Assembly: GCA_001179505.1 (NCBI GenBank)
Contig: CDMY01000374.1
Coordinates: forward strand, 31,439 to 95,438
Direction of reading: 5' to 3'
DNA length: 64,000 nt
Origin: Vitrella brassicaformis CCMP3155
Taxonomy: Eukaryota > Protista > Chromerida
Made by a program: the position numbers and the translations under genes. The notes beneath the pieces were generated by a model. It was not told where the DNA came from. It ran no database searches and saw only the letters and a program-made list of their open reading frames with translations. Below are positions 19,981 through 55,900 of the stretch, in pieces. Each line of letters begins with the position of its first letter. The stretch's first letter is position 1.

Positions 19981-20310
19981 CTAAACGGCAGGAGGGCAAG
20001 ACCATCGAAGCTGTGAGGAAGGGTGTGTGTGTGTGTGATTGTTTGTCAGGCGATATTGCGTCTTCAGCGTGAGTTGCAGGCGGCAGCGTTGGAGAATCGG
20101 CGGCTCAAGAGCTGCCTCGACAAGGAGAGGGCCAGACAGACTCTCAACCAACAGGTGTGTGTGTGCCAAGGACAAAGGCTGCTGATCGGCGTGAGTGTGT
20201 GTCTCCTTATGTCACTGATGCAGACGTTTGGCGCTTTGCAAGAGGAGAATCGCAGCCTCCGCGAGCAGCTTACCAGCCGGCAGGGCAGCATCAATACAGA
20301 GAGAAACTGA
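19981..20310 (+). pseudogene. 5'-truncated duplicate of the 3' exons of the coiled-coil gene
   Basis: QEGKTIEA / AILRLQRELQAAALENRRLKSCLDKERARQ / TFGALQEENRSLREQL matches 13765-14143. No upstream exons are present. Confidence 0.85.
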
Positions 20311-20541
20311 GCGCTGCGTGCTCACGTATTGATGGACATTTCCAATCAGGTCATGATGTCCCATGGCAAACACACAACACCTCACAGCCCCTCGCAGTGG
20401 TCCAGATGGAGACACAAGAAAGAAACCGAGGGCTGCACTTCGTATATTCGCCGTGTCATTCGCGACGACACATGATCACCCACTCACAATGTCTCCTAGC
20501 TTCTTATTCGAAGCACACCCGAGCGACTGACAGACTGTGAC

Positions 20542-23500
20542 TCACATGATCATCCAGCAAGGCCCAGAAGCAGGCTTGTACGGCCGCATGATCTTTCTGA
20601 TCTCCGGCCTGTTTGCCGCCCAGAACCATGGCGTCAGTCCCTGTTGTGATGAGATGAGCTGAGCAAACCACTCAGCCCATCGATGGTGGGAATATCGGTG
20701 TGCACTTACCTTGTTGTTTGTGATGTCCAGCAGAGCACCGCCCCCCCACTCGAGCCTTTGAGAAGGACACACACACAGAGAGAGAGAGAGAGAGTGGATG
20801 AGATGTTCGCATCAGTCAGTCATCTGTGTCGCCCACAGCTGAAACACAGCGGCAGATTTGCCCCAGAGTACAGCCCCATGGAGTGCCGTGTCGCCCTCCT
20901 GTGTGTGTCATGCACACAGAGGAAAGGCAATCAATCAGTGAGAGAAGATTGTGTTGTCTCACCTTGTCGGTCTGTGTGAGAAGGTTCTTTCGTTTGGCAT
21001 ACAGGGCCTTCAACACATCGACATGACCATTCCCGGCAGCATAGATGAATGGCGTGGCGCCCTCCTGCAATCAACACACGTACACACACAATCGAGACAC
21101 TGAAGCGTCAAAGACATGTGTATGCTCTCCTAGATTGTCGCGTGCATCGATCAGTTTGGGATCCCACTCCATCAGCTTATTGACAGCCGCGACATGGCCC
21201 TCGTAGACAGCCTTGTGCAGGGCAGTGTCACCACGCTGCATTGCGTCACACCCAATACACTCTTTATCACCATCAGCAGTACAAGATGGTTTGTCTGTGT
21301 CGGTACCTTGGTCTCTGTTTGCTGCAGTACGTCAGGTTTGCTCGCATACATGACCGACATAACGCCCACCTCACCCTTCTGTGCAGCCTTGAGGAAGGGC
21401 GTGAACTGTGCGCAGGAATGAGAAGACACAGACCACTGAGTGCATTTCGATCGTCTTCACGATTCCATACCTCGAAATTGTATTTGTCTCGTTCCCGTTT
21501 GTCGAGTATGTCCTTGCCATCCCTCTCGATGAGCAAACGAACTGACAGAGACCATGACCGATGGATGGTTCGATGGATTCTTCACTTATATGTTTGAGTG
21601 TCTCGCGATGTCTCTGTTTACCCATCCCATCCCATGTTACCGGACTGCTCATCGGCGGCCTTGACGGCTTCGAAGATGTCAGTCTGACAGACAATCAGCA
21701 CAAGAACAGCGGCCCATTGACGTGTGGGGTTTAGTTGCTGTTTCCCTTACGTGTTTGATCTGCGGCTGTGGAGGGCTCGGCGATGTCTTCACTGACGGCT
21801 GCTGGACGGGGAACGCTGCACGACACACATGACACATGAAACGATTCAATACATGTGCGTGCCTTCCACAGCTGACCTGTTTGCTCTTGCGGAACCACAA
21901 GTTTGATCTGTGCTGGCGAGACCGCACTCGGTGGCCCCGTTATGGTGCTGGCCATGCTCGCATGGACACCCGCTGTATGGCCAATGGGAGACACGACAGC
22001 GGGAGAAACAGAGGGAGGGAGAACCGACAACACCTCTGCACGTAGTCAAGCAGTCTAAATTAGGCGACGGGGGCTGGCCCAAGGCGTTTAACCGGCAATT
22101 GACCTGTATCTTTCGACGGACTCGCCGGAATACCCAGCTTGGCCAACAACTACCAAGCGGTCAGGGAAGTAGACACTCGACATGCACACGCCTTTGTCCA
22201 ATGTCTATATCAGGCACCTCTTTGGCTGTGGGGCGATCTTTTGGATTAAAGGCAAAACAACTCTGAACAGCAACCACGATCAGAAGGGAAACGCGGCAAA
22301 CAGGAAAGGGCCCTCGGCTTGTCTTGATGGCACTTTTGATGTGCTCAGGCAGGGAATCGGGGATGCGGGGAATCTGACATGCGTGTGCAAAAAAAGACTT
22401 CCAGAGAATCTGTCAACACGTGTCAACGTGGCAGGTCACCTGCTTTCGGACCACAACGGCCATCATGATATTTACGGCACTTCAGCCTCCGAAAGGAGGC
22501 CCACCTGAACATCACAGATATAGGCTGCAAGTGTGTCCGAGTGAAGGTTGCATCTGCTGACCGCCACACAGCTCCGCAATGATGCATCCAACCGCCCATA
22601 TGTCCGCCTCCATAGAGGGCTTCCCACTGCACACACCGGCAGTCATTCAAGTTCTCAAGCCCACCGGCTTTTGTTGCACTTACAGTTGTCTGGATCCAAA
22701 GCTTCAGGTGACATGTAATTGACGGTTCCCTTAATGCCACCTGCGGTGCGGTGACGGATGCAACAAGCACAGACGCACCTCACTCGCCGCCTTCCGCCAT
22801 GCCATGTCTCTTGCTACCTGCAGAAGAGCTCGACGTCACTTGAACATTCCGCGTCATGCCGAAGTCAGATATCTTGATCACCAAATACTCAGCCAACTGA
22901 CAGACACGAGACACAACAAGAGGCTATGGCCACCGACCGAGAGGTGAAGGTTGTCTGCCCTCACGAGAATATTGCCCGGTTTCAGGTCTCGATGCAGGAT
23001 TCCGTGGTCGTGAAGATACTGCACGCCCTCACATATCTAACGGCAATCGACACACAGATTGAGATGAGTCACCTGATGGCTCTGACGCTCGTATGCTTTG
23101 CTGTACCTCTCTCACGAATCTGTCTCGCACGTCGGGCGGCGGGGGTCCGTTCTTAGCGAGGTAGGACGCTAGAGAGCCGCCCTCACACAACTCTGAAAAT
23201 GACAAGCAGACATCACGAGACAGCCTGGCTGGACAAAGCGAAGTGTATGACCACCTGTGACGATCATGAGTCCGTGTTTCTTGTCTGCGCAAACACCTAA
23301 CAGCCGCACGATGTTGGGATGCCGCAGTGAAAGCATCGGCTCAGCCTCGATCAGAGCGTCCTCCATCGCTCCAGCCATCAGCTCCTATGCACATGCCACA
23401 ACAAGGCATGCGATAAACAATGCACGAGCGGCGACATCTCACACCCTCACGTCGTCATCGACCTCCTGTCCGGTCTCCCTCGTTTCCTCTCTCAGCTTCT

Positions 23501-46788: not shown

Positions 46789-49700
46789 CTATCGCTTGTA
46801 CTTCTGCATGATCTCTCTTATCTCGGCTTTCTTCTTCTCTTTTTCCGAAATCACGAACTCTGCCGCCTCGTCCCACGGCGTGTACCCCTGTTGTGATGAG
46901 ATGAGATGAGCACACCGCTCAGCCCATCGATGGTGTGAATGTCTGTGGGCACTCACCTCATTGTCTTTGATGTCCAGCAGCGCACCGCCGCCCCACTCGA
47001 GCCTTTGAGAATGACACACACACACAGAGAGAGAGAGAGTGTGGATGAGATGTTCGCGTCAGTCAGTCATCTGTGTCGCCCACAGCTGAGACACAGCCGT
47101 AGAGTGGCCATCCCGTGCAGCCCAATGAAGTGCCGTGTTTCCATTCTGTTTGTGTCATACACACAGACGAAAGGCAATCAAGCAGTGAGAGAAGACTGTG
47201 TTGTCTCACGTTGTTCGTCTGTGTGAGCAGGTCCTTTCGTTTGGCATACAGAGCCTCCAACACATCGACATGGCCATTGTAGGCAGCCGACATGAATGGC
47301 GTCCAGCCATACTGCAATCAAAACACACACACACACACAATCGACACACTGAGGCGTCAGAGGCATGTGTGTGCTCTGTCACCTTGTTGCGTGCATCGAT
47401 CAGTTTGGGATCCCACTCCATCAGCTTATTGACCGCCGCAACACGACCACTCCAGGCAGCCCGGTGCAGGGCAGTGTTACCAAGCTGCATTGCATCACGG
47501 CCAACACACATCTCCTCCTCATCAGCAGCAGCACAAAAGATGGTTTGTCTGTGTCGGTACCTGGTTGTCTGTTTGCTGCAGTACGTCAGGTTTGCTCTCA
47601 TACATGACCGACATGACGCCCACGTGACCCTCAGCTGCAGCCACGATGAAGGGTGTCCACTGCAGAAATGAGAACACACAGACAGACCACTGAGGGCATT
47701 CCTGTCGGCTTCACAATTGTTCCACACCCCGCTGCTTTCTCGTTTGTCGAGTATGTCCTTGCCGTCTCGCTCGATGAACAAACGGACGGACTACAAATCG
47801 CCGAACTTGGCGGCCTCAAAGATGTCCGTCTGCCACACAACCAGCACAAGAAGAGCGGCCCATTGACGTGTGGGATTCAGTCGCTGTCTCCCTTACGTGT
47901 TTAATTTGCGGCTGTGGGGCCCTCGGCGGTGTCTTCACTGACGGCTGCTGGGCGGGGGGCACTGCGCGACACACAGAGCATCGGATGGTGTGGCCCTGTG
48001 TGCGTCTCTGTGTGTGTGTGTCTCGCCGACCAATGTGCTGCGAGGGCGGCTGAGAGGTCTTGGCCACACTGCTGGCGGCCCCGTTGTGGTGCTGGCCGTG
48101 CTCATGTGCACACCCGACGAATGGCCGCCAGGAGATGACGCAGTGCCTGCATTTGACCGCAAGACGTCTACAGCAGAGAGGAGCCGCGCATCAATGATTA
48201 CCTCTAAAGCTCTCGCCCGTCCCGCGAAAGAATCCTCAGCGGAATCGCGGTGCCGGCGAGTCAGCTGCCTTCCCGCTTTGACTTCCAGACGAAGACGAGA
48301 TGCGCAACTTGTCGAGGACCTGTAATGGGACGAGCAGCAAGGCCCGACAAAGAGATGGGAAATATCTGCTCGTGTGTCTGACTTGTTTGGCTGTCGGACG
48401 ATTGGCGGTTTTGTAGGCAAAACACATCTGATGGACGCAAAGCGGAAGAGAGAGAAAGATCATGGATACCCATTCTGTTGTCGGTTGCCTTGATGGCAGT
48501 CTTGATGTGCGGCGGCAGAGACGCCGGAATATCAGGAATCTGACACGAAGGGAGACACGAGTGAATGAATAAGACCGAGGCAGTCTAATGAGGCGAATCG
48601 AGTACCTCTTTTTTGTTGACGACCTTTCGACTGATCTGCGCCATAACTTTTCCCTCAAACGGAGGCCGACCTGCACTCAGAGTATGTCGTGGCCGCTGTT
48701 CTTATGAGGAGTGTCACAGGGGATCTGCTGCTGACCTCCATGAATCTCCCCGAGTACTGAAGACGCACACATACACAAATGGACAAGAAAGAGGCGATGA
48801 AGTAGCGGCTTGCAACATGTCTCTCTTGTGTGTGGCATGGCTTGCTTACTGCCGCCCAAAGCCCAAATGTCCGCCTTGGCAGTCAGCTTGTCCACTGAAC
48901 GACATAGCAGTAAGACCCTCCAGCCAGTGACATTGACTCGCTTTGCTTACGATCTGTGTCGAAGCCCTCGGGCGGCATATAGTTGGGAGTCCCTCCAACT
49001 GCAGCACATGAGTCATTTCTGCTCTCGTGAGCCGCACTGCAAACATTGGTCTGTGTGTGACTACCAGCGGTGAGCGTTGTCTTTCTCTGTGCGCTGCGAA
49101 TCATTCCGAAGTCCGACAGTTTGATGTTGTGGCCTTCATCCAACTTAGATGAGTGAGACAACAAAAAGTCTGAACCTCTCATAGGAGGATCTCTATCGTG
49201 GCCGACCAGTATGTTCTCGGGTTTCAAATCTCTGTGGACGATGTGGTTGTCATGCATATACTTCACGGCCTCACAGATCTGTGACCAACATACACACACA
49301 TCTCTAGGCGGAGACACAAGAGACCTCTGCATGTATGCTCCCTTTCAACCTGTTTGGTGAATTTGTCTCGCACATCGAGTGGCAGCGGTCCGTGGCTCGC
49401 CAGGTAGGACGCTAGAGAGCCGCCCTCACACAACTCTGATGAGAACGACGGCAGAGACACCAGAAGGGACAAGGCGGATGGACGAAGGGGAGAATAGACT
49501 GACTACCTATGACGGTCATGAGGCCGTGTTTGTCGTCTCTGCAGACGCCCAGCAGCCGCACTATGTTGGGGTGATCGAGTTTGGTCATCGGGAGGGCCTT
49601 TCGCAGCACCTCCATGAACTGCGACTGCACACAAACACAAAGATGCGCACCGACAGCGGGGAGGCGTCTTCTGAGCATGTACCTCTCGGTCGAGCTCTTC

Positions 49701-49910
49701 ATGGCCCTTGTAGATTTTGACAGCCACGGGCCGCCCTCGGAGCTCCCCTCGACGAACAATACCGAAGCCGCCACTCCCTGAGGAACCCGCATGACAAACA
49801 CATGATCCGTTCAGCCAATGCCCTCAGCCTGGGCCGGGCGGTGAATAATGCTGACCGAGCTCCTTGTCGCTCACAGTGAGGTCCTTCGGGTCGATCAGCA
49901 GATCGGCCAT
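46789..49910 (-). pseudogene. Kinase-linker-ankyrin gene, copy E (premature stops after the kinase domain)
   Basis: [46 protein letters not shown] and ADIWALG. In-frame TGA at 48236-48238 and TAG at 47791-47793 (GDL-stop-SVR; copy D has CAG). The ANK block ends at TAG 46789-46791. Confidence 0.82.
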
Positions 49911-49989
49911 GAGGGGAGGAGAGGGGAAAGGGGAAGGAGACTGCAAGCTAAGCTCGGCGCCCCCACCTTGCCCCAAGAAGAAACATCAA

Positions 49990-52900
49990 ATGCTCCTTCT
50001 TTTCCTTGCGCTGTTCGCTGGCGCCCAGCAAGGGACAGGTACAAGCAATAATGCTGAAGTACTGCAGCCAATTGAACCCAGCTGTTTTTGGTTGTTCTTC
50101 TCAGATGCTGTCCCGGACGTTGAGGGCCATGTGTGCACTCCCTTTCAGGAATGCGTGTTGAGCCTCAATGGGACAGGTGCGACAGACAAACAGGTCACAG
50201 GCATGATTGTTCCTGAGGTTCAATTCTCTTTTTCAGATCTGGACCAAATCAACTCTATTGTGGTGTCCAAGAGGAGTGCTGGCAGCCCATGTGCTCCGCC
50301 AGTCAGAGTGGCCGTCCCATACGATGGCATCCTGTTGCCCACCAACGACGAAGGCTCTGAATATGACCCGCTGAAGATCCTCTCAAGTAATATTCTCACG
50401 GGGGACGCAGTCGGCGTCTATGATCTCTGCTGGTGAGTCCCCAAGTCACGAAGGCACAGGAGGGCGGATTGACTTGCTGCTTTCAGGTGTGCCGGGAACG
50501 TCACTTTCTGCCCCTTTTGGTCGAAGGCCGGAATCCCGAGCTTCGACACGTTTGTCGGAAATCTCACAGTGCGGGGTGAGGAGTGATGCAACGCGCTCGA
50601 TTCCCTCCCCCTTTGTCACAAGCAGGCCCCGATAAGACAGCCACCTACCAGTGCAGTGCCACAACGGACTGCTCCATTATCATCGAAGGAATCGGTACAT
50701 ACATCCGTTCGAAATGCAAGTCCATCGACTCGTGTGTCTCCATCGAGCTGTCTGCAGCTTTAGACCAGAATGACACTATTCTGCTGTCGGCGACCCCATG
50801 TGACAACGCGACTGAAGTCAGCTTTCCCGGCCTGTTTGGGTGGGGTCAGGACCTGGCCACCGCCATTGCTGGCGGAACACCCAACTCACAGACCTATGAA
50901 ATAGGCAGCAAAAGGCCGCGACTCGCAGGCGCATTCCACCTCTGCTGGTGAAGTGGGCGATCGGGCACGGCCTTCGCAGGAAGGGGACCTGTGTGGGTTT
51001 GTGCGTGTGTAGGTGCGGATACAAAGACGATTTGTCGGCGGAGTGTTCCTTTCCTAGTGACAGCGGTTTGTTCAAAGTCCCTGCAGGTCGTCTGACTGTG
51101 AATGGTATGCCACATGCATGTGAGGAGAGACACGAAGGAATGCACTGGGTGCAATCAGGCCCTCTGTACCGGGACTGGGCCTGCGCCGCCGGAAAGCAGT
51201 GCATAATCAATGTGGAGGGCATAGGTACACATGCTCAAGTTCCGTCCTCGCTGTCTGTTCTCGTTTGTTAACGTCTGTCTGCCTGTCTGTCTGTCTGTCT
51301 GTCTGTGAATTGCACAGGTCTGGCCGATGGAGACACGATGGTGGTTTCCCCAACAAACTGCACCAATATCACCGTTGTGGAGAACTCCACCACATTGGCG
51401 TCGGGCGGGAGCGGAGAGACGTATGACTTCGGACGGTATGACCCACAGATACTCACAAGAGCACAGAAGGGCACTGTTTGGTTTACTTTCATTTCGGCAG
51501 GCCCCTTTATATGGGACTTGATCCACTGTACCTGTGTTGGTCAGCCAAACGAGTGAAATCCTCCAGCTGCTCAGCAGTCTCGCTGCCGTCTATCTTTCCG
51601 TGCAGGTGTCCAAAGGGGGCTGCATGCGATTCAGAGTTGAATTTTGGGATCGAAGCAGGCACAATCACTGTCAGTGGTACGTGCAGAAGATGCAACCGTG
51701 CCCACCATTGCATACTTTACGTGTCTCTTGTCTGTGTGGACAGGGCCTGATGGCAATGCAGATATCACATGCGTCGCTGGCCGAAATTGCACCGTCACAA
51801 TTGCAGGCACAGGTGTGAATTCACACACAGAAAGTGGATCCACTCATCAGCGGTAGCATTCATTACTCGCTTCGAATTCTGCTGCCCGCTTGCAGGTCTG
51901 ACGGACGGCGACACGATGCTGCTTTCTGCTGGCGGCTGCGCATCGCCAACGAAAAACTATTTTGGTGGAGCCGACTTGGTTGACGTCGCAACAGCATCTG
52001 GAGGGGATGGGCTCACATATGAGTTCGGCATCGCCAAGCAGGGCGTCGCAAGCCTCTCGCTGTGTTGGTATGTGTGTTTGTAGGGGCACGAGTCTGCTGC
52101 TGGGCGGGTGGATGCTTGTATCTGTGCATATCTAATGTGTGTGTGTGCAGGTGTAAAGGCCCGTGCGATCCAGATGCACGACCAGGGGACTTCATCGCTG
52201 AAGCTGGCAGCCTGACAATTTACGGTACTCATGAGAATGGGCGAGAATGCTGCTCGGTGGGATGGTGACGCCACACTCATTGAATGCTTGTCTTCACAAA
52301 AATACAGGGCCGAGTGGCACTGACGATATTGTCTGTATTGTCCGGCAAGACTGTCCCATCTCCGTCACAGGGACTGGTAGGCGGCCTTGATTGGCATCAG
52401 CGTGTCATGGCTGGACTTGTGTCTCGGTGGACGTCCAGGGCTGCACGAGCTGGACAGTATCCTGGTGTCTGCGACGTCATGTGACAGCCCGACCGAGGTC
52501 AGCCCTGACGGTCTCTTCGGGGCCAGTCAGGACGTCGCGATCGCCATTAGCGGATCGGCAAACTCAAGAACCTATGAAATCGGCAACAAAAGACCGAGAA
52601 GAGAAGGGGATTTCTTCCTCTGCTGGTAACAGAGAATCGCGCAGGCACAGATAAGGCATACAGGCATGTGGTACCACGGGTTGTGCAGGTGCGGATATCA
52701 GACGTTCGAGTCGATGACCACACCATTTCCTCCTCCTGAGGCGTGTGACCATGACGACCCAACTCTCTTCACCGTGCCAGCCGGCATGCTTGTTGTTCAA
52801 AGTGAGTCAGACGACCTATGTGAGATTGAGGTGCCGCATTCAACCCCCTTGCTGTCTATGTCGTGCGTCAGATGATATTTCCGAGTTCTTGGCAGCTGGT

Positions 52901-55900
52901 CACATTAGGATCGAAAACCCAGAGGGACAGACGGAGGACATTACTGTGGTTTGCCGCATGCCGGCGGCCACGACAGTGACTTGTTCGCGTGCCAGGTATG
53001 GCAAGCGGATCACGCTGACAGAGGGCAGCCCCATAACCGATGTCGAGGGCACGAGCTTTGATGATGTGCTGAGGGGCAACTCACGGGCCAACACGCTTAC
53101 CGGCGCGGCGGGGAATGATGTCATTGTCACTGGAGGCGGCTTGGACGGTGAGTTGACGCGTACCCACCCATACACAGAGACACTTGCTCCCCTCGTCCCT
53201 TCGTGTGTTGGTTCAGTGTTGATCGGCAATGCGGGAGCAGACACTTTGTGAGTCAGCCCACTCACCCTCTCTGTGTGCGTGTGATTATAGCATACCCTTC
53301 CTCTGCCTGTCCTGTCTTCAGTGTGATATCTAACGTGGCTGGAGACGTGACCGTGCCATCATTCGACAGAGGGTCTGGCAGCAATGATGTGCTGGACCTC
53401 AGTGCCTTCAGGGACATCACGAGCATGTTAGCCCTCATGTCTCGCGTCAGCAACGGTAAGAGGTATGGCTGAGCGGGGAACCCATCTCGTCTCCTCTCTC
53501 TCTGCCTCCGAACAATGATCGCCAGGTAGTGTCGTTATCCAAATGGCGCCGGGGCGATCAGTCACCGTCGCTGACCTCACGCCAGCCGACCTGAAGCCGA
53601 GCTATTTCGCTTTCGCATCCCCCGAAGACAAAGAAGACGACCGGGACTGCGACTCAGCCTGGTTTATACTTTGGGGACTCTCTTCAAACAAGCGAGCTTG
53701 GTGCGTCGAGACGTGGGCGTCTATTGCCATCCTGGCTGGCGCGACGGTGCTCATATTGGTCGGTGTGTGTTGTGGCTGCTGGTGGTGCCGCTCTCCGGAG
53801 GGCCGCGAGAGACTAGCTGACCGATGTCTGAGGTGTCTGTGTATGAGGCCGGGGCCACAACCCGAACCCGTCGAGCCATCCGAACCCTCAGTGAGGACTG
53901 AGAGGGAGGAATTCATCGAAACGAGACTCAAAGAGAGGTGCGCTCGCATGAGACACTGCATACATCGGCTGGGTCTGTCTGATCGATCGTGCTGCAGGAC
54001 TGTCGTGAGAGCTATTCCCTTGGCACAAGGTACACACACACAGTAGGCAGCGGATGACAGGAACACACGGGACACCGACAGAGAGAAGGACTTGATGTTA
54101 CACAGACATCTTCGGGTTGGCCTGGATAGCCCGCTACGGCGCCTACGCGGTGAGGCGGTACCTCCCTGACACGACGGTGATGTGTGTCTCTCGATGTCTC
54201 CTTTCTTATGTTTGTTGGCAGGTGGTCCCCGGCATAAGAATGAAGGGGTGGGTGACTCACTGCATGGAAACACACACGTCGAATGGAATTTATGGCCACC
54301 TATCGTTTCATCACCTGTCTGCCCCCGTGTGTTCGCTTTCTCCCTGTCTGTCTGTCTGTATGTATGTATGTGTGCAGGCAATTTAAGGTTAAGATCAGCA
54401 AAATGTTTCCCCTCATCCTCTGCCTTGTGGCGTTGGTTCTGCAAGTTGTGGCCTACGAAGCCCTCTTTGATGTCAATAAGACCAGCGATTACATCGTCAG
54501 ATTATTCAAAGCCAGGTCAGTCACGGTCAAGGAATAAACAGAGCACAACCACCCAGTTGCCCATTTGCGTGTCTCTGTCTCCTTTTCTTTCAGGGAGATC
54601 GAGGAGCTGGCTGATGTGCTCAAAGAGGGATTCGACGACTCAACGGAGAATCCCTTTGACGCGAGGTTCATCGCAGTCTATATCTTCACTTCCTTTGCAC
54701 TGTCGGCTTTGGCCAATCGGCTGCGTATCATCGAGCTGTGGCTGTTGGAGCACCGGCTTGTGTGGTGCGCTGACCCAGCTATGATGGGACGACACTTGTA
54801 AGCGAATCTGAGAGTGATTTCAATTGTCACATGACTACATGTGTGTCCCTCCGTGGCTGACCGGCTAAACTGCAGCTATCTGGTGCTCGGTGATTGCCAC
54901 CCTAATTTCACCCAGGAGCAGCTCGCCCAGCTAGATATTGCCAACGTAGGCACGCCAACGAATGGTCATGTGTTCTGGGTCTATCTCTGTGTGTCTATGG
55001 TGCCTCCCTGCAGGTGTGGGAGTGGATGACGGGTTTTCTGTGCCTTGCTCTAAACGTAGTGGAGGTGCTGTGGCTCTTCTTGTTCACCTACAGCGCCGTG
55101 GAAGTCATCATTCGCACGATTGAGATACCAGTACGCATAACTGCCGGGCTCATCTGCATGCATGGTGATTGTGGATTGTCGTCTTTGGCTTTTCGCCGCA
55201 GGAAATATTTGTGATCACTGTCATTCGTGAGTGAATGCTCTGGTGGATTGTAGGTCATGTGCGTATATGAATGCGCACATGTATTGTTTGCGTTTCAGGA
55301 ATTCTGGTCGTCGCGTATCTCGACAGAGCCGTCCTGCACCTGTTCACAAGCTTCTTCGACATGATCATTGCCCCCCGGTGCTGGCTCTTCCAGATTGTTG
55401 CGTCAATCGAGAAGATGGCAGAGGCCCTACAGAGACGCAAGAGCACCCAGGGCAAGCTGTGGTTCTGTTTCGGTGCCTCTTTCGATGTCGTATTCGGTAT
55501 CATCTTCAGGTGGAGCTCAGCAGACAGGCGATTTTGTCCATCACAATTCATTGTACATTGAGACTCATCTCATGCAGGATCTTTCTGCGGCTCCCCGTCG
55601 GCCTCATGTTTGCCGTCGCCATGTCCCCATTCATACGCTTGGGCGCGGCTAAGCTGCCAGACCAATACTCCTTCATTCCCTCCTTCATTTCCGACCTGCT
55701 CGGCTGGGGGATGCTGGCCGCCATTGTGCTCTTCGGGCTGCTCACTCCGTTCATCAACAGAACATGTAATTGAGGCAGGCCAACAACTGCATGGGCGATT
55801 CTTGGTGTCTCCGTCGTGACTGTGTATTTATAGTTGGCCACGTGACGAGATTGGGAAAGAGAGAGTTCGTCGATGACGGCGACCTTAAGGTTGGGACACA

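What the first reader, a model, noticed from the sequence alone, without database searches (positions are those of the whole stretch)
53040..53610. Bacterial-type RTX beta-roll plus T1SS-like C-terminal module inside an intron-rich eukaryotic membrane protein
Seen: GTSFDDVLRGNSRANTLTGAAGNDVIVTGGGLDVLIGNAGADTFV (GGxGxDx-type nonapeptides), followed by DVLDLSAF..LALMSRVS.GSVVIQM..SVTVADLTPADLKPSYFAF. Known: this pairing is the C-terminus of bacterial RTX/serralysin-type proteins exported by type I secretion. Here it is interrupted by three GT-AG introns, two at or inside the repeats, lies downstream of a signal peptide and sits just outside a TM helix, so contamination is excluded. Inference: a horizontally acquired RTX module reused as a Ca2+-stiffened juxtamembrane spacer or folding switch in an adhesin/receptor.
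Basis: partly seen in the sequence, partly recalled or inferred. Interest (0 to 1): 0.8.

Follow-up and report, generated by a model that had tools for sequence, protein, structure and literature searches.

The report
Bacterial RTX calcium domain in algal membrane protein
A spliced, transcribed gene of the alga Vitrella brassicaformis carries a complete bacterial-type calcium-binding RTX beta-roll just outside its membrane anchor, and at least 15 other surface-protein genes in the same genome carry the same module, so a domain that bacteria use for type I secretion now serves as a stalk in eukaryotic membrane proteins.

Summary
Window 53006-53614 (+), read across three GT-AG introns, encodes a lead-in, four in-register RTX nonapeptides and a 73-residue C-terminal cap. 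Exon 17 alone passes Pfam HemolysinCabind (30.5 bits, cut-off 23). All three introns are spliced out in cDNA-like contigs of one public run and are present in three DNA runs.

The genome is Vitrella brassicaformis CCMP3155. My gene model has 20 exons and 920 aa: N-terminal hydrophobic leader, five Cys-rich modules, RTX block, Cys motif, TM helix and tail.

An AlphaFold model of a single-exon paralogue (pLDDT above 90 over the block) superposes on the C-terminal RTX domains of type I secretion (T1SS) substrates up to or near the end of each chain (Z 15-18).

At least 16 loci carry RTX repeats, and about 11 share the same block plus Cys motif plus TM cassette under different ectodomains. Eleven of 13 sampled Vitrella blocks form one clade. 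dN/dS is about 0.2. The genome has no TolC or HlyD, so the block cannot act as a T1SS signal here.

Horizontal origin is likely. The donor, the date and the "Ca2+-stiffened spacer" function remain inferred. First readers of this scan made 14 RTX notes on other pieces of this genome; the eight shown to me describe the same kind of module. I found no paper that describes it.

The parts
49990..54046 (+). Gene model: 20 exons, 19 GT-AG introns, 920 aa. Predicted type I membrane protein.
   Evidence: Built. Nine of the 19 introns match joints in run X1. The other ten were placed by frame, splice consensus and analogy between repeated modules. The 3' end is uncertain.
49990..50034 (+). N-terminal hydrophobic leader (putative signal peptide), MLLLFLALFAGAQQG.
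   Evidence: No signal-peptide predictor was available. An in-frame upstream ATG also exists.
50035..52800 (+). Ectodomain: five Cys-rich modules of about 130 aa, each ending ...LCW, plus one further a-type exon. Each module is built from three exon types.
   Evidence: No Pfam match. The nearest ESM Atlas clusters are uncharacterised eukaryotic proteins, commonest Perkinsozoa, score 0.91. This is a lead only.
52801..53005 (+). Pre-domain with a conserved Cys pair (...C-x11-C...), shared with subfamily A paralogues.
   Evidence: Alignment A1; coordinates. The part starts on the last base of exon 16 (52801), so it runs across the intron at 52802-52871.
53006..53074 (+). Lead-in strand of the RTX block (RITL..SPITDVEGTSFDDVLR). 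It matches the motif that opens each CyaA RTX block.
53075..53325 (+). Four RTX nonapeptides in register: 53075-53101, 53102-53128, 53129-53224 and 53225-53325. The last two are each interrupted by an intron.
   Evidence: Pfam PF00353 30.5 bits against a cut-off of 23; register shown.
53148..53216 (+). Intron 1, 69 nt, phase 1, inside nonapeptide 3.
   Evidence: Joint 53147|53217 in X1, absent from DNA runs. Paralogues C520, C323 and C240 have a donor at the same codon position. C651 has none there.
53217..53247 (+). 31-nt mini-exon (VLIGNAGADTF).
   Evidence: Flanked by two RNA-supported joints.
53248..53321 (+). Intron 2, 74 nt, phase 2, between residues 8 and 9 of nonapeptide 4.
   Evidence: Joint 53247|53322 in X1.
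53326..53614 (+). C-terminal cap of the beta-roll (73 aa, ISNVAGDVTVPSFD ... KPSYFAF). It is homologous to the last residues of bacterial RTX blocks, which end ...DFxF.
   Evidence: End-to-end alignment with 22 bacterial blocks. phmmer of the window's own spliced block aligns query residues 14-132 to P0017 residues 370-486 of 487. Paralogue model.
53456..53525 (+). Intron 3, 70 nt, phase 1, inside the cap. Found only in this gene among the paralogues examined.
   Evidence: Joint 53455|53526 in X1. C520, C651, C323 and C240 read straight through this point.
53615..53713 (+). Acidic linker plus juxtamembrane two-Cys motif (C-x2-AWF...WC). It corresponds to ECGWF..PEC in the paralogues.
53714..53785 (+). 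Transmembrane helix (WASIAILAGATVLILVGVCCGCWW).
   Evidence: Highest Kyte-Doolittle 19-residue window of the protein, 2.55. The equivalent segment of the paralogue is modelled as a helix.
53786..54046 (+). Predicted cytoplasmic tail and stop codon. The extent is uncertain.
   Evidence: ORF. X1 contigs cover only to 53842. Further joints at 54029|54106 and 54149|54222 may belong to a UTR or to the next gene.

Best explanation
Window 53006-53614 encodes a complete terminal RTX domain of bacterial type. It has a lead-in strand, four Ca2+-binding nonapeptides (about two turns of a parallel beta-roll) and the C-terminal capping sheet.

The domain sits in the extracellular juxtamembrane position of a 920-aa type I membrane protein of Vitrella brassicaformis. 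It is one copy of a cassette (RTX block, acidic linker, two-Cys motif, TM helix) that the Vitrella lineage most likely obtained from a bacterial T1SS substrate. The lineage gave it introns and a membrane anchor, and it is now found under unlike ectodomains: Cys-rich alveolate-type modules here, an FG-GAP propeller at C240 and bacterial Ig-like domains in subfamily B.

Inferred mechanism: the protein enters the ER through its N-terminal leader. The block, which would be disordered without Ca2+, binds Ca2+ in the ER lumen and in seawater. It folds from its cap into a rigid beta-roll about 130 residues long that holds the ectodomain off the membrane. It has no secretion-signal role.

Shown: homology, fold (on a paralogue), splicing, family, purifying selection, absence of T1SS parts. 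Inferred: horizontal origin, Ca2+ binding, stalk function, surface location.
For: Homology:
- PF00353 scores over its cut-off on the window exon.
- The profile hits CyaA (3.7e-32) and PrtC (3e-14).
- The block aligns end to end with bacterial blocks, including the cap.
- The window's own spliced block aligns over residues 14-132 with bacterial blocks that end at the protein's C-terminus.

Fold: the AF2 model of paralogue C1045 has pLDDT 86.5, above 90 for residues 1-150. Foldseek's top hits are all RTX domains. VIA gives Z 17.9 with rmsd 2.0 over 128 residues to lipase PML 488-617, Z 16 to PrtC 301-479, and Z 15.6 to CyaA block V 1525-1662.

Eukaryotic gene: three introns are spliced in X1 and retained in DNA runs. 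The genome is identified as Vitrella CCMP3155.

Family: 16 loci pass PF00353. There are 28 exon-level matches to the module profile on 15 scaffolds, and the same cassette is read. Eleven of 13 Vitrella blocks form one clade, support 97/97. dN/dS is 0.16-0.22 on the block among subfamily B pairs.

Origin:
- A query with cap, Cys motif, TM and tail finds only Vitrella proteins.
- In the RTX-module searches, every hit outside the Vitrella set that carries a source name is bacterial.
- Paralogue P0281 is nearest to a bacterial Big_12 + HemolysinCabind cluster.

No T1SS: no TolC-type OEP and no HlyD in the assembly.

RTX folding on Ca2+ and the role of the cap: abstracts of PMC9120197, PMC4303809 and PMC8486122.
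Against: - The model is of a paralogue (37-43% identical to the window's pieces in alignments A1 and A2), not of the window protein. The spliced window sequence had no reference to hand in.
- The one exhaustive protein search was swamped by giant bacterial RTX proteins. Absence from Chromera, dinoflagellates and other eukaryotes therefore rests on three word-indexed, length-limited searches.
- Bacterial sampling in the tree is small (22 blocks) and no bacterial sister group is resolved.
- Two internal blocks of the C277 genes fall outside the Vitrella clade on a long branch.
- With only four nonapeptides the roll is short.
- No experiment shows Ca2+ binding, surface location or any stalk role.
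- X1 is RNA only by inference.
Confidence: 0.72

Rival explanations
1. The block is more than a passive stalk. It is a working Ca2+-dependent interaction surface. It could form lattices as in the Caulobacter S-layer protein RsaA, bind polysaccharide as in the AlgE R-modules, or bind a receptor as in CyaA. In that case the family would tie surface proteins to the Vitrella cell wall or to each other.
For: RsaA (Z 13.0-13.4) and the AlgE R-modules (Z 10.5-13.1) are among the structural matches. Conservation extends over the exposed cap and lead-in, not only the Ca2+ positions. dN/dS is about 0.2.
Against: Nothing here tests binding. The same conservation is expected of a purely structural domain. 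The block is far shorter than lattice-forming RTX regions.
Confidence: 0.2
2. Vertical inheritance: RTX blocks with this cap are an old eukaryotic or alveolate domain, kept in Vitrella and lost or diverged elsewhere. There was no bacterial transfer into this lineage.
For: The family is diverse and intron-bearing, and is fused to alveolate-type ectodomains. Absence elsewhere rests on searches of limited sensitivity (one search was uninformative).
Against: No non-Vitrella eukaryotic protein appeared in any search, although NCBI, UniRef, EukProt and MMETSP are among the sources. The profile matched 139,925 database proteins. The named hits sampled are bacterial, and the closest look-alike architecture is bacterial.
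Confidence: 0.1
3. Artefact: bacterial contamination, mis-assembly, or a decaying pseudogene fragment read as an exon.
For: The genome paper reports removing 620 bacterial scaffolds from the raw assembly. Two paralogues show an in-frame TGA or a frame problem.
Against: The frame is open across RNA-confirmed GT-AG junctions. The sequence is contiguous in three DNA runs. G+C is even across the window. The block is fused in frame to the upstream exons and the TM helix. Paralogues are under purifying selection.
Confidence: 0.01
4. The block still acts as an export or sorting signal, recognised by a eukaryotic ABC transporter or another non-classical route.
For: It is homologous to the region that carries the T1SS signal in bacteria.
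Against: The block is internal and is followed by a linker, a TM helix and a tail. An N-terminal leader is present. No HlyD or TolC homologue is in the genome.
Confidence: 0.02

Closest known systems
C-terminal RTX domains of T1SS-secreted lipases and serralysin-family proteases (PML lipase 2z8x/2zj7, LipA 2qua, PrtC 1k7g, serralysin 1sat)
   Same: Same fold and same order of elements: lead-in, GGxGxDxUx beta-roll, C-terminal capping strands. Z 14-18, rmsd about 2 A, aligned up to or near the end of the bacterial chain. The sequence profile match has E 3e-14.
   Different: Here the domain is internal and is followed by a Cys motif, a TM helix and a tail. The protein has an N-terminal leader, no catalytic lipase or M10 domain and introns. 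The host has no T1SS. There are only four nonapeptides.
Bordetella pertussis CyaA RTX blocks, especially block V with its capping structure (5cvw, 5cxl, 9p0c)
   Same: The block architecture is the same. Each block opens with an I/V-x-N/D-V-x-G-S/T..D motif and ends in a cap. [quoted passage not shown] Z 15-16; E 3.7e-32 for the whole RTX domain.
   Different: This is a single short block rather than five. It has no acylation or pore-forming parts and no toxin context. It is membrane-tethered in a eukaryote.
Bacterial 'calcium-binding proteins' with Big_12 Ig-like domains plus HemolysinCabind (ESM Atlas cluster, mostly Cyanobacteriota), and the alphaproteobacterial RTX proteins found
   Same: Nearest whole-protein look-alike of subfamily B paralogue P0281 (score 0.91). 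The RTX block plus cap aligns along its full length.
   Different: The bacterial proteins end at or near ...DFxF and lack the Cys motif, TM helix and tail. The window gene carries alveolate-type Cys-rich modules instead of Big domains.
Vitrella paralogues already in public databases (UniRef 'Peptidase M10 serralysin C-terminal domain-containing protein', 'SbsA Ig-like domain-containing protein', NCBI 'unnamed protein product')
   Same: Same cassette. Automatic pipelines have already tagged PF00353 or the serralysin C-terminal domain on them.
   Different: These are names from automatic annotation only. At least one public model (P0110, scaffold C240) stops inside the block, because intron 2 was read through, and so lacks the cap and TM helix. 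No paper in the searched library describes the family.

Membership tests
RTX repeat domain (Pfam PF00353 HemolysinCabind; beta-roll) | Profile match above the curated gathering score | tested here: met
   30.5 bits on window exon 17 and 29.9 bits on the junction peptide, against a cut-off of 23.
RTX repeat domain (Pfam PF00353 HemolysinCabind; beta-roll) | Tandem nonapeptides G-G-x-G-x-D-x-U-x in unbroken 9-residue register | tested here: met
   There are four repeats. Position 6 is N, D, D, D and position 8 is L, I, L, F. The register is the same in the paralogues.
RTX repeat domain (Pfam PF00353 HemolysinCabind; beta-roll) | Parallel beta-roll fold closed by a C-terminal cap | tested here: met
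   Tested on paralogue C1045, not on the window protein. pLDDT is above 90 over residues 1-150. Z 15-18 to solved RTX domains. The window sequence aligns without large gaps to that paralogue.
RTX repeat domain (Pfam PF00353 HemolysinCabind; beta-roll) | Ca2+ binding and Ca2+-induced folding | not testable with these tools
   Needs CD, NMR or ITC on the recombinant block.
Type I secretion substrate (RTX protein in the strict sense) | Uncleaved secretion signal at the extreme C-terminus | tested here: not met
   The block ends at aa 777 of 920. A linker, a TM helix and a tail follow. In 15 of the 22 bacterial blocks listed the block ends within two residues of the C-terminus.
Type I secretion substrate (RTX protein in the strict sense) | Cognate ABC transporter, HlyD-type adaptor and TolC-type outer-membrane factor in the genome | tested here: not met
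   PF02321 (OEP) and TIGR01843 (type_I_hlyD) have no match in the 72.7-Mb assembly. The ABC component was not tested, because eukaryotic ABC-B proteins would confound it.
Type I secretion substrate (RTX protein in the strict sense) | No N-terminal Sec signal | tested here: not met
   The gene model starts with a hydrophobic leader. This was judged by eye and hydropathy only.
Serralysin / Peptidase M10 with M10_C domain | M10 catalytic domain with a zinc-binding HEXXH motif upstream of the roll | tested here: not met
   No Pfam family matched any of the six upstream open-frame pieces scanned. PF08548 itself did not match the window pieces or the paralogue ORF.
Vitrella RTX-TM cassette family (defined here) | Lead-in, four nonapeptides, cap, acidic linker, two-Cys motif and TM helix, in that order | tested here: met
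   The window gene aligns with C520, C651, C323 and C240 (subfamily A) and with C1045, C217, C499 (two loci), C349 and C218 (subfamily B). Its sister is C520, 62% identical.

The most novel reading that the evidence does not exclude
One bacterial T1SS substrate gene (Ig-like domains plus a terminal RTX block) was captured by the Vitrella lineage. It gained a leader, a TM anchor and introns. Its RTX-TM cassette was then shuffled onto native alveolate ectodomains, founding a lineage-specific surface-receptor family. In that family the Ca2+-triggered, cap-first folding of the RTX block now works in the eukaryotic secretory pathway, for example as an ER-lumen folding nucleus or ratchet, or as a Ca2+ sensor at the cell surface.
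Probability: 0.3. Interest if true: 0.7.

Novelty: new variant of a known kind. Interest (0 to 1): 0.55.

Why it matters
RTX beta-rolls are treated as a hallmark of proteins exported by bacterial type I secretion. They stay unfolded in the Ca2+-poor cytoplasm and fold outside the cell. Here the whole terminal RTX domain has been taken over by a eukaryote. It is routed through an N-terminal leader instead of a T1SS and tethered by a TM helix, and it is found under several unlike ectodomains.

This gives a natural test of whether Ca2+-driven RTX folding works in the ER and secretory pathway. It is also a clean, RNA-supported example of a bacterial domain acquiring introns, including one intron private to this gene. 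And it points to a surface-protein family in a free-living relative of apicomplexan parasites that the searched literature does not describe.

Practically, at least one public gene model of the family is truncated inside the block, so the family is under-annotated.

Tried and rejected
1. The single exhaustive search (search of protein representatives with profile A1) was wasted. It returned 139,925 hits, and the top 150 were all giant multi-repeat proteins of 1,777-7,743 aa. I should have left the nonapeptides out of the profile. It says nothing about eukaryotic relatives.

I did not pursue it further.

3. Pfam found nothing in six upstream open-frame pieces. NCBIfam gave no match to any T1SS C-terminal target-domain model. 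PF08548 (Peptidase_M10_C) did not match the window pieces or the paralogue ORF.

4. Literature. 'Vitrella' + 'RTX' gave one irrelevant paper. The Vitrella/Chromera genome paper does not mention hemolysin, RTX, serralysin or beta-roll. Two broader searches gave nothing relevant.

5. The window's own spliced protein was never handed to AlphaFold or to the large searches. It has no reference, and I did not type it. I used exon references, one 59-residue junction peptide and single-exon paralogues instead. I could not retrieve the public model of the window gene (one search found only the C240 paralogue).

6. dN/dS between the window gene and C520 was not computed, because the divergence is too high.

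7. Contamination, chance Gly/Asp repeats and a live T1SS signal were considered and rejected (see the rival explanations).

Full report
**What is there**

Removing three canonical GT-AG introns (53148-53216, 53248-53321, 53456-53525) joins them into one open frame. The spliced product has these parts:
- a lead-in strand, 53006-53074;
- four nonapeptides in strict 9-residue register (GNSRANTLT, GAAGNDVIV, TGGGLDVLI, GNAGADTFV), 53075-53325;
- a 73-residue tail ending KPSYFAF, 53326-53614.

Intron 1 lies inside the third nonapeptide. Intron 2 lies between residues 8 and 9 of the fourth. Intron 3 lies in the tail.

**Is it more than chance?**

Exon 17 alone scores 30.5 bits against Pfam HemolysinCabind, whose cut-off is 23. 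A 59-residue peptide spanning the exon junctions scores 29.9. NCBIfam gives local hits to the C-terminal parts of the serralysin, RTX-hemolysin, polyurethane-esterase and EglC models. A profile of the module, built from this gene and its paralogues (A1), matches solved CyaA RTX fragments at E 3.7e-32. It also matches PrtC/serralysin proteases at about 3e-14 over profile positions 14-128, well beyond the Gly/Asp repeats.

**Is it a real, expressed eukaryotic gene?**

The assembly has 72,700,666 bp in 1064 contigs. That is exactly the figure given for Vitrella brassicaformis CCMP3155 in the genome paper (PMC4501334). A paralogue is 100% identical over the aligned region (88% of the query region) to an NCBI protein of that strain.

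Of six public runs that hold the stretch, I laid four on window 49700-55200. Three are colinear with the genome. The fourth (X1) holds contigs that join 53147|53217, 53247|53322 and 53455|53526, all with GT..AG ends. X1 also shows six further joints upstream in the same gene. X1 is labelled only 'RNA?'. The spliced joints seen only there are my reason to read it as cDNA.

With these joints, and with module-to-module analogy for the rest, I built a 20-exon, 920-aa model covering 49990-54046. In order it contains:
- a hydrophobic N-terminal leader;
- five Cys-rich modules of about 130 aa, each ending LCW;
- a pre-domain with two Cys;
- the RTX block, aa 646-777;
- an acidic linker with a two-Cys motif;
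- the most hydrophobic segment of the protein, aa 811-834;
- an 86-residue tail.

Ten of the 19 introns and the 3' end lack RNA support.

**The tail is the cap of the roll**

Bacterial RTX proteins retrieved with a paralogue align with the Vitrella module from the lead-in to the last residues. The shared pattern runs GADTFV, then G..TI.DF..G.D.IDL..F, then V.I, then L....F.F. In 15 of the 22 bacterial blocks listed, the block stops within two residues of the protein's C-terminus. In the rest it is internal, and it can recur within one protein. The window's own spliced block aligns over residues 14-132 with such blocks, for example to residues 370-486 of a 487-residue protein.

I modelled the single-exon paralogue on scaffold C1045 with alignment A2 (39 rows). 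It is 37-43% identical to the window's pieces in alignments A1 and A2. Mean pLDDT was 86.5, above 90 for residues 1-150. A low-confidence linker and a long helix follow. Foldseek's best matches are all RTX domains. Structural realignment gives:
- Z 17.9, rmsd 2.0 A, 128 residues, to Pseudomonas MIS38 lipase 488-617;
- Z 16 to PrtC 301-479;
- Z 15.6 to CyaA block V 1525-1662.

In each case the alignment runs up to or close to the end of the chain.

**It cannot be a secretion signal here**

The block is internal, and 143 residues follow it. The protein has an N-terminal leader. The assembly has no TolC-type outer-membrane factor (PF02321) and no HlyD-type adaptor (TIGR01843). The control genomes did match both models.

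**It is a family**

Sixteen loci on 16 different scaffolds pass the HemolysinCabind cut-off. The module profile gives 28 exon-level matches on 15 scaffolds. Reading them shows the same cassette: lead-in, four nonapeptides, cap, acidic linker, two-Cys motif (ECGWF..PEC in most), TM helix.
- Subfamily A has introns: the window gene, C520, C651, C323 and C240.
- Subfamily B carries the whole cassette in one exon at C1045, C217, C349, C218 and one C499 locus. A second C499 locus has one intron inside the RTX repeats.
- More divergent copies, some with several blocks, are at C1064, C277, C609, C307 and C699.

The ectodomains differ:
- C240 has an FG-GAP propeller.
- Subfamily B has Ig-like domains. 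UniRef calls them bacterial or SbsA Ig-like. The ESM Atlas places them with Big_12; the nearest cluster is a bacterial Big_12 + HemolysinCabind family at score 0.91.
- The window gene's Cys-rich modules have no Pfam match. Their nearest Atlas clusters are uncharacterised eukaryotic proteins, mostly Perkinsozoa, at score 0.91. This is a lead only.

C520, C323 and C240 have a donor at the position of intron 1. C651 lacks one there. Intron 3 is private to the window gene.

In a tree of 13 Vitrella and 22 bacterial blocks, 11 Vitrella blocks form one clade (97/97). The window gene is sister to C520, at 62% identity. Two internal C277 blocks sit elsewhere on a long branch, and no bacterial sister is resolved. 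Among subfamily B pairs dN/dS on the block is 0.16-0.22, so the block is under purifying selection.

**Origin**

A query made of only the cap, Cys motif, TM helix and tail found seven proteins. All are Vitrella proteins or unnamed JGI sequences that match Vitrella loci. Queries that included the repeats found Vitrella proteins and then proteins whose source names, where given, are all bacterial. No other eukaryote appeared.

These searches use a word index and a length filter. The one exhaustive search was swamped. Absence from Chromera and other alveolates is therefore likely but not shown. I rate horizontal origin from bacteria, followed by expansion and shuffling inside the Vitrella lineage, at about 0.8. 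Donor and date remain open.

**Mechanism (inferred)**

RTX blocks are disordered without Ca2+. They fold on Ca2+ binding, and in CyaA the C-terminal cap is critical for that folding (abstracts of PMC4303809, PMC9120197 and PMC8486122).

In a protein that enters the ER by a leader, the block would meet high Ca2+ in the ER lumen and in seawater. It should then be a folded, rigid roll next to the membrane, stapled by the nearby Cys pair. Its constant position under changing ectodomains fits a stalk or foot. A binding or lattice role, as in RsaA or the AlgE R-modules, is the main rival. Nothing here tests Ca2+ binding, location or function.

**Comparison and novelty**

The fold and sequence family are known, and automatic annotation has already put PF00353 or 'serralysin C-terminal domain' on some Vitrella paralogues. 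I found no paper that describes them. At least one public model (P0110) stops inside the block.

First readers of this scan made 14 RTX notes on other pieces of this genome. The eight shown to me describe the same kind of module. That agrees with the family I found independently.

I class it as a new variant of a known kind: a complete terminal RTX domain working as an internal, membrane-proximal module of eukaryotic type I membrane proteins.

Noticed in passing
window 49990-52625 (+): Five tandem Cys-rich modules of about 130 aa, each built from three exon types: C..C...G.LT..G, then GP.G..DI.C..G..C...I.GTG, then LD...ILL...C......Y..G....LCW. They have no Pfam match. The nearest ESM Atlas clusters are uncharacterised Perkinsozoa proteins (score 0.91, 200 shared features).
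   Followed up: partly
window 54029-54222 and 54403 onward (+): Run X1 also joins 54029|54106 and 54149|54222, just before and after my predicted stop codon (54044-54046). These may be an alternative 3' end, 3'-UTR introns, or the 5'-UTR of the next gene. The next gene starts at ATG 54403 with a signal-peptide-like MFPLILCLVALVLQ and has RNA-supported introns at 54516-54593, 54798-54875 and 54946-55013.
   Followed up: partly
L006 / P0110 (G000:C240, about 20067-23165): The public NCBI model of this paralogue (601 aa, FG-GAP propeller plus RTX) ends ...GADML. It reads into intron 2, so it lacks the cap, the Cys motif and the TM helix, which the locus does encode downstream.
   Followed up: partly
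L004 (G000:C323) and L001 (G000:C651): C323 has an in-frame TGA between nonapeptides (..NKLTG*EGND..). C651 lacks intron 1 and seems to be one base out of frame in the stretch that corresponds to the mini-exon. These may be pseudogenes, assembly errors or different splicing.
   Followed up: no
L003 (G000:C395:243364-246468): A different RTX gene with a longer run of nonapeptides (PF00353 48.6 bits), apparently also split by introns and without the cassette's cap or TM signature.
   Followed up: no
L030, L033, L032 (G000:C277, C609): Divergent genes that carry two or three RTX-plus-cap blocks in tandem, some with long insertions in the cap. Two of these blocks fall outside the main Vitrella clade in the tree. 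This may mean a second acquisition or fast divergence.
   Followed up: partly
window 51269-51313 and 54333-54382: (GTCT)n / (GTAT)n microsatellites inside introns or intergenic DNA. The reads tool skipped both as repeats.
   Followed up: no
window 53763-53956: DNA runs X2 and X3 each hold a contig that touches 53763-53784 and 53936-53956 with only 21 letters on a side and unrelated sequence beyond. It is most likely a short chance or paralogous match in the TM/tail exon, not a deletion allele.
   Followed up: no
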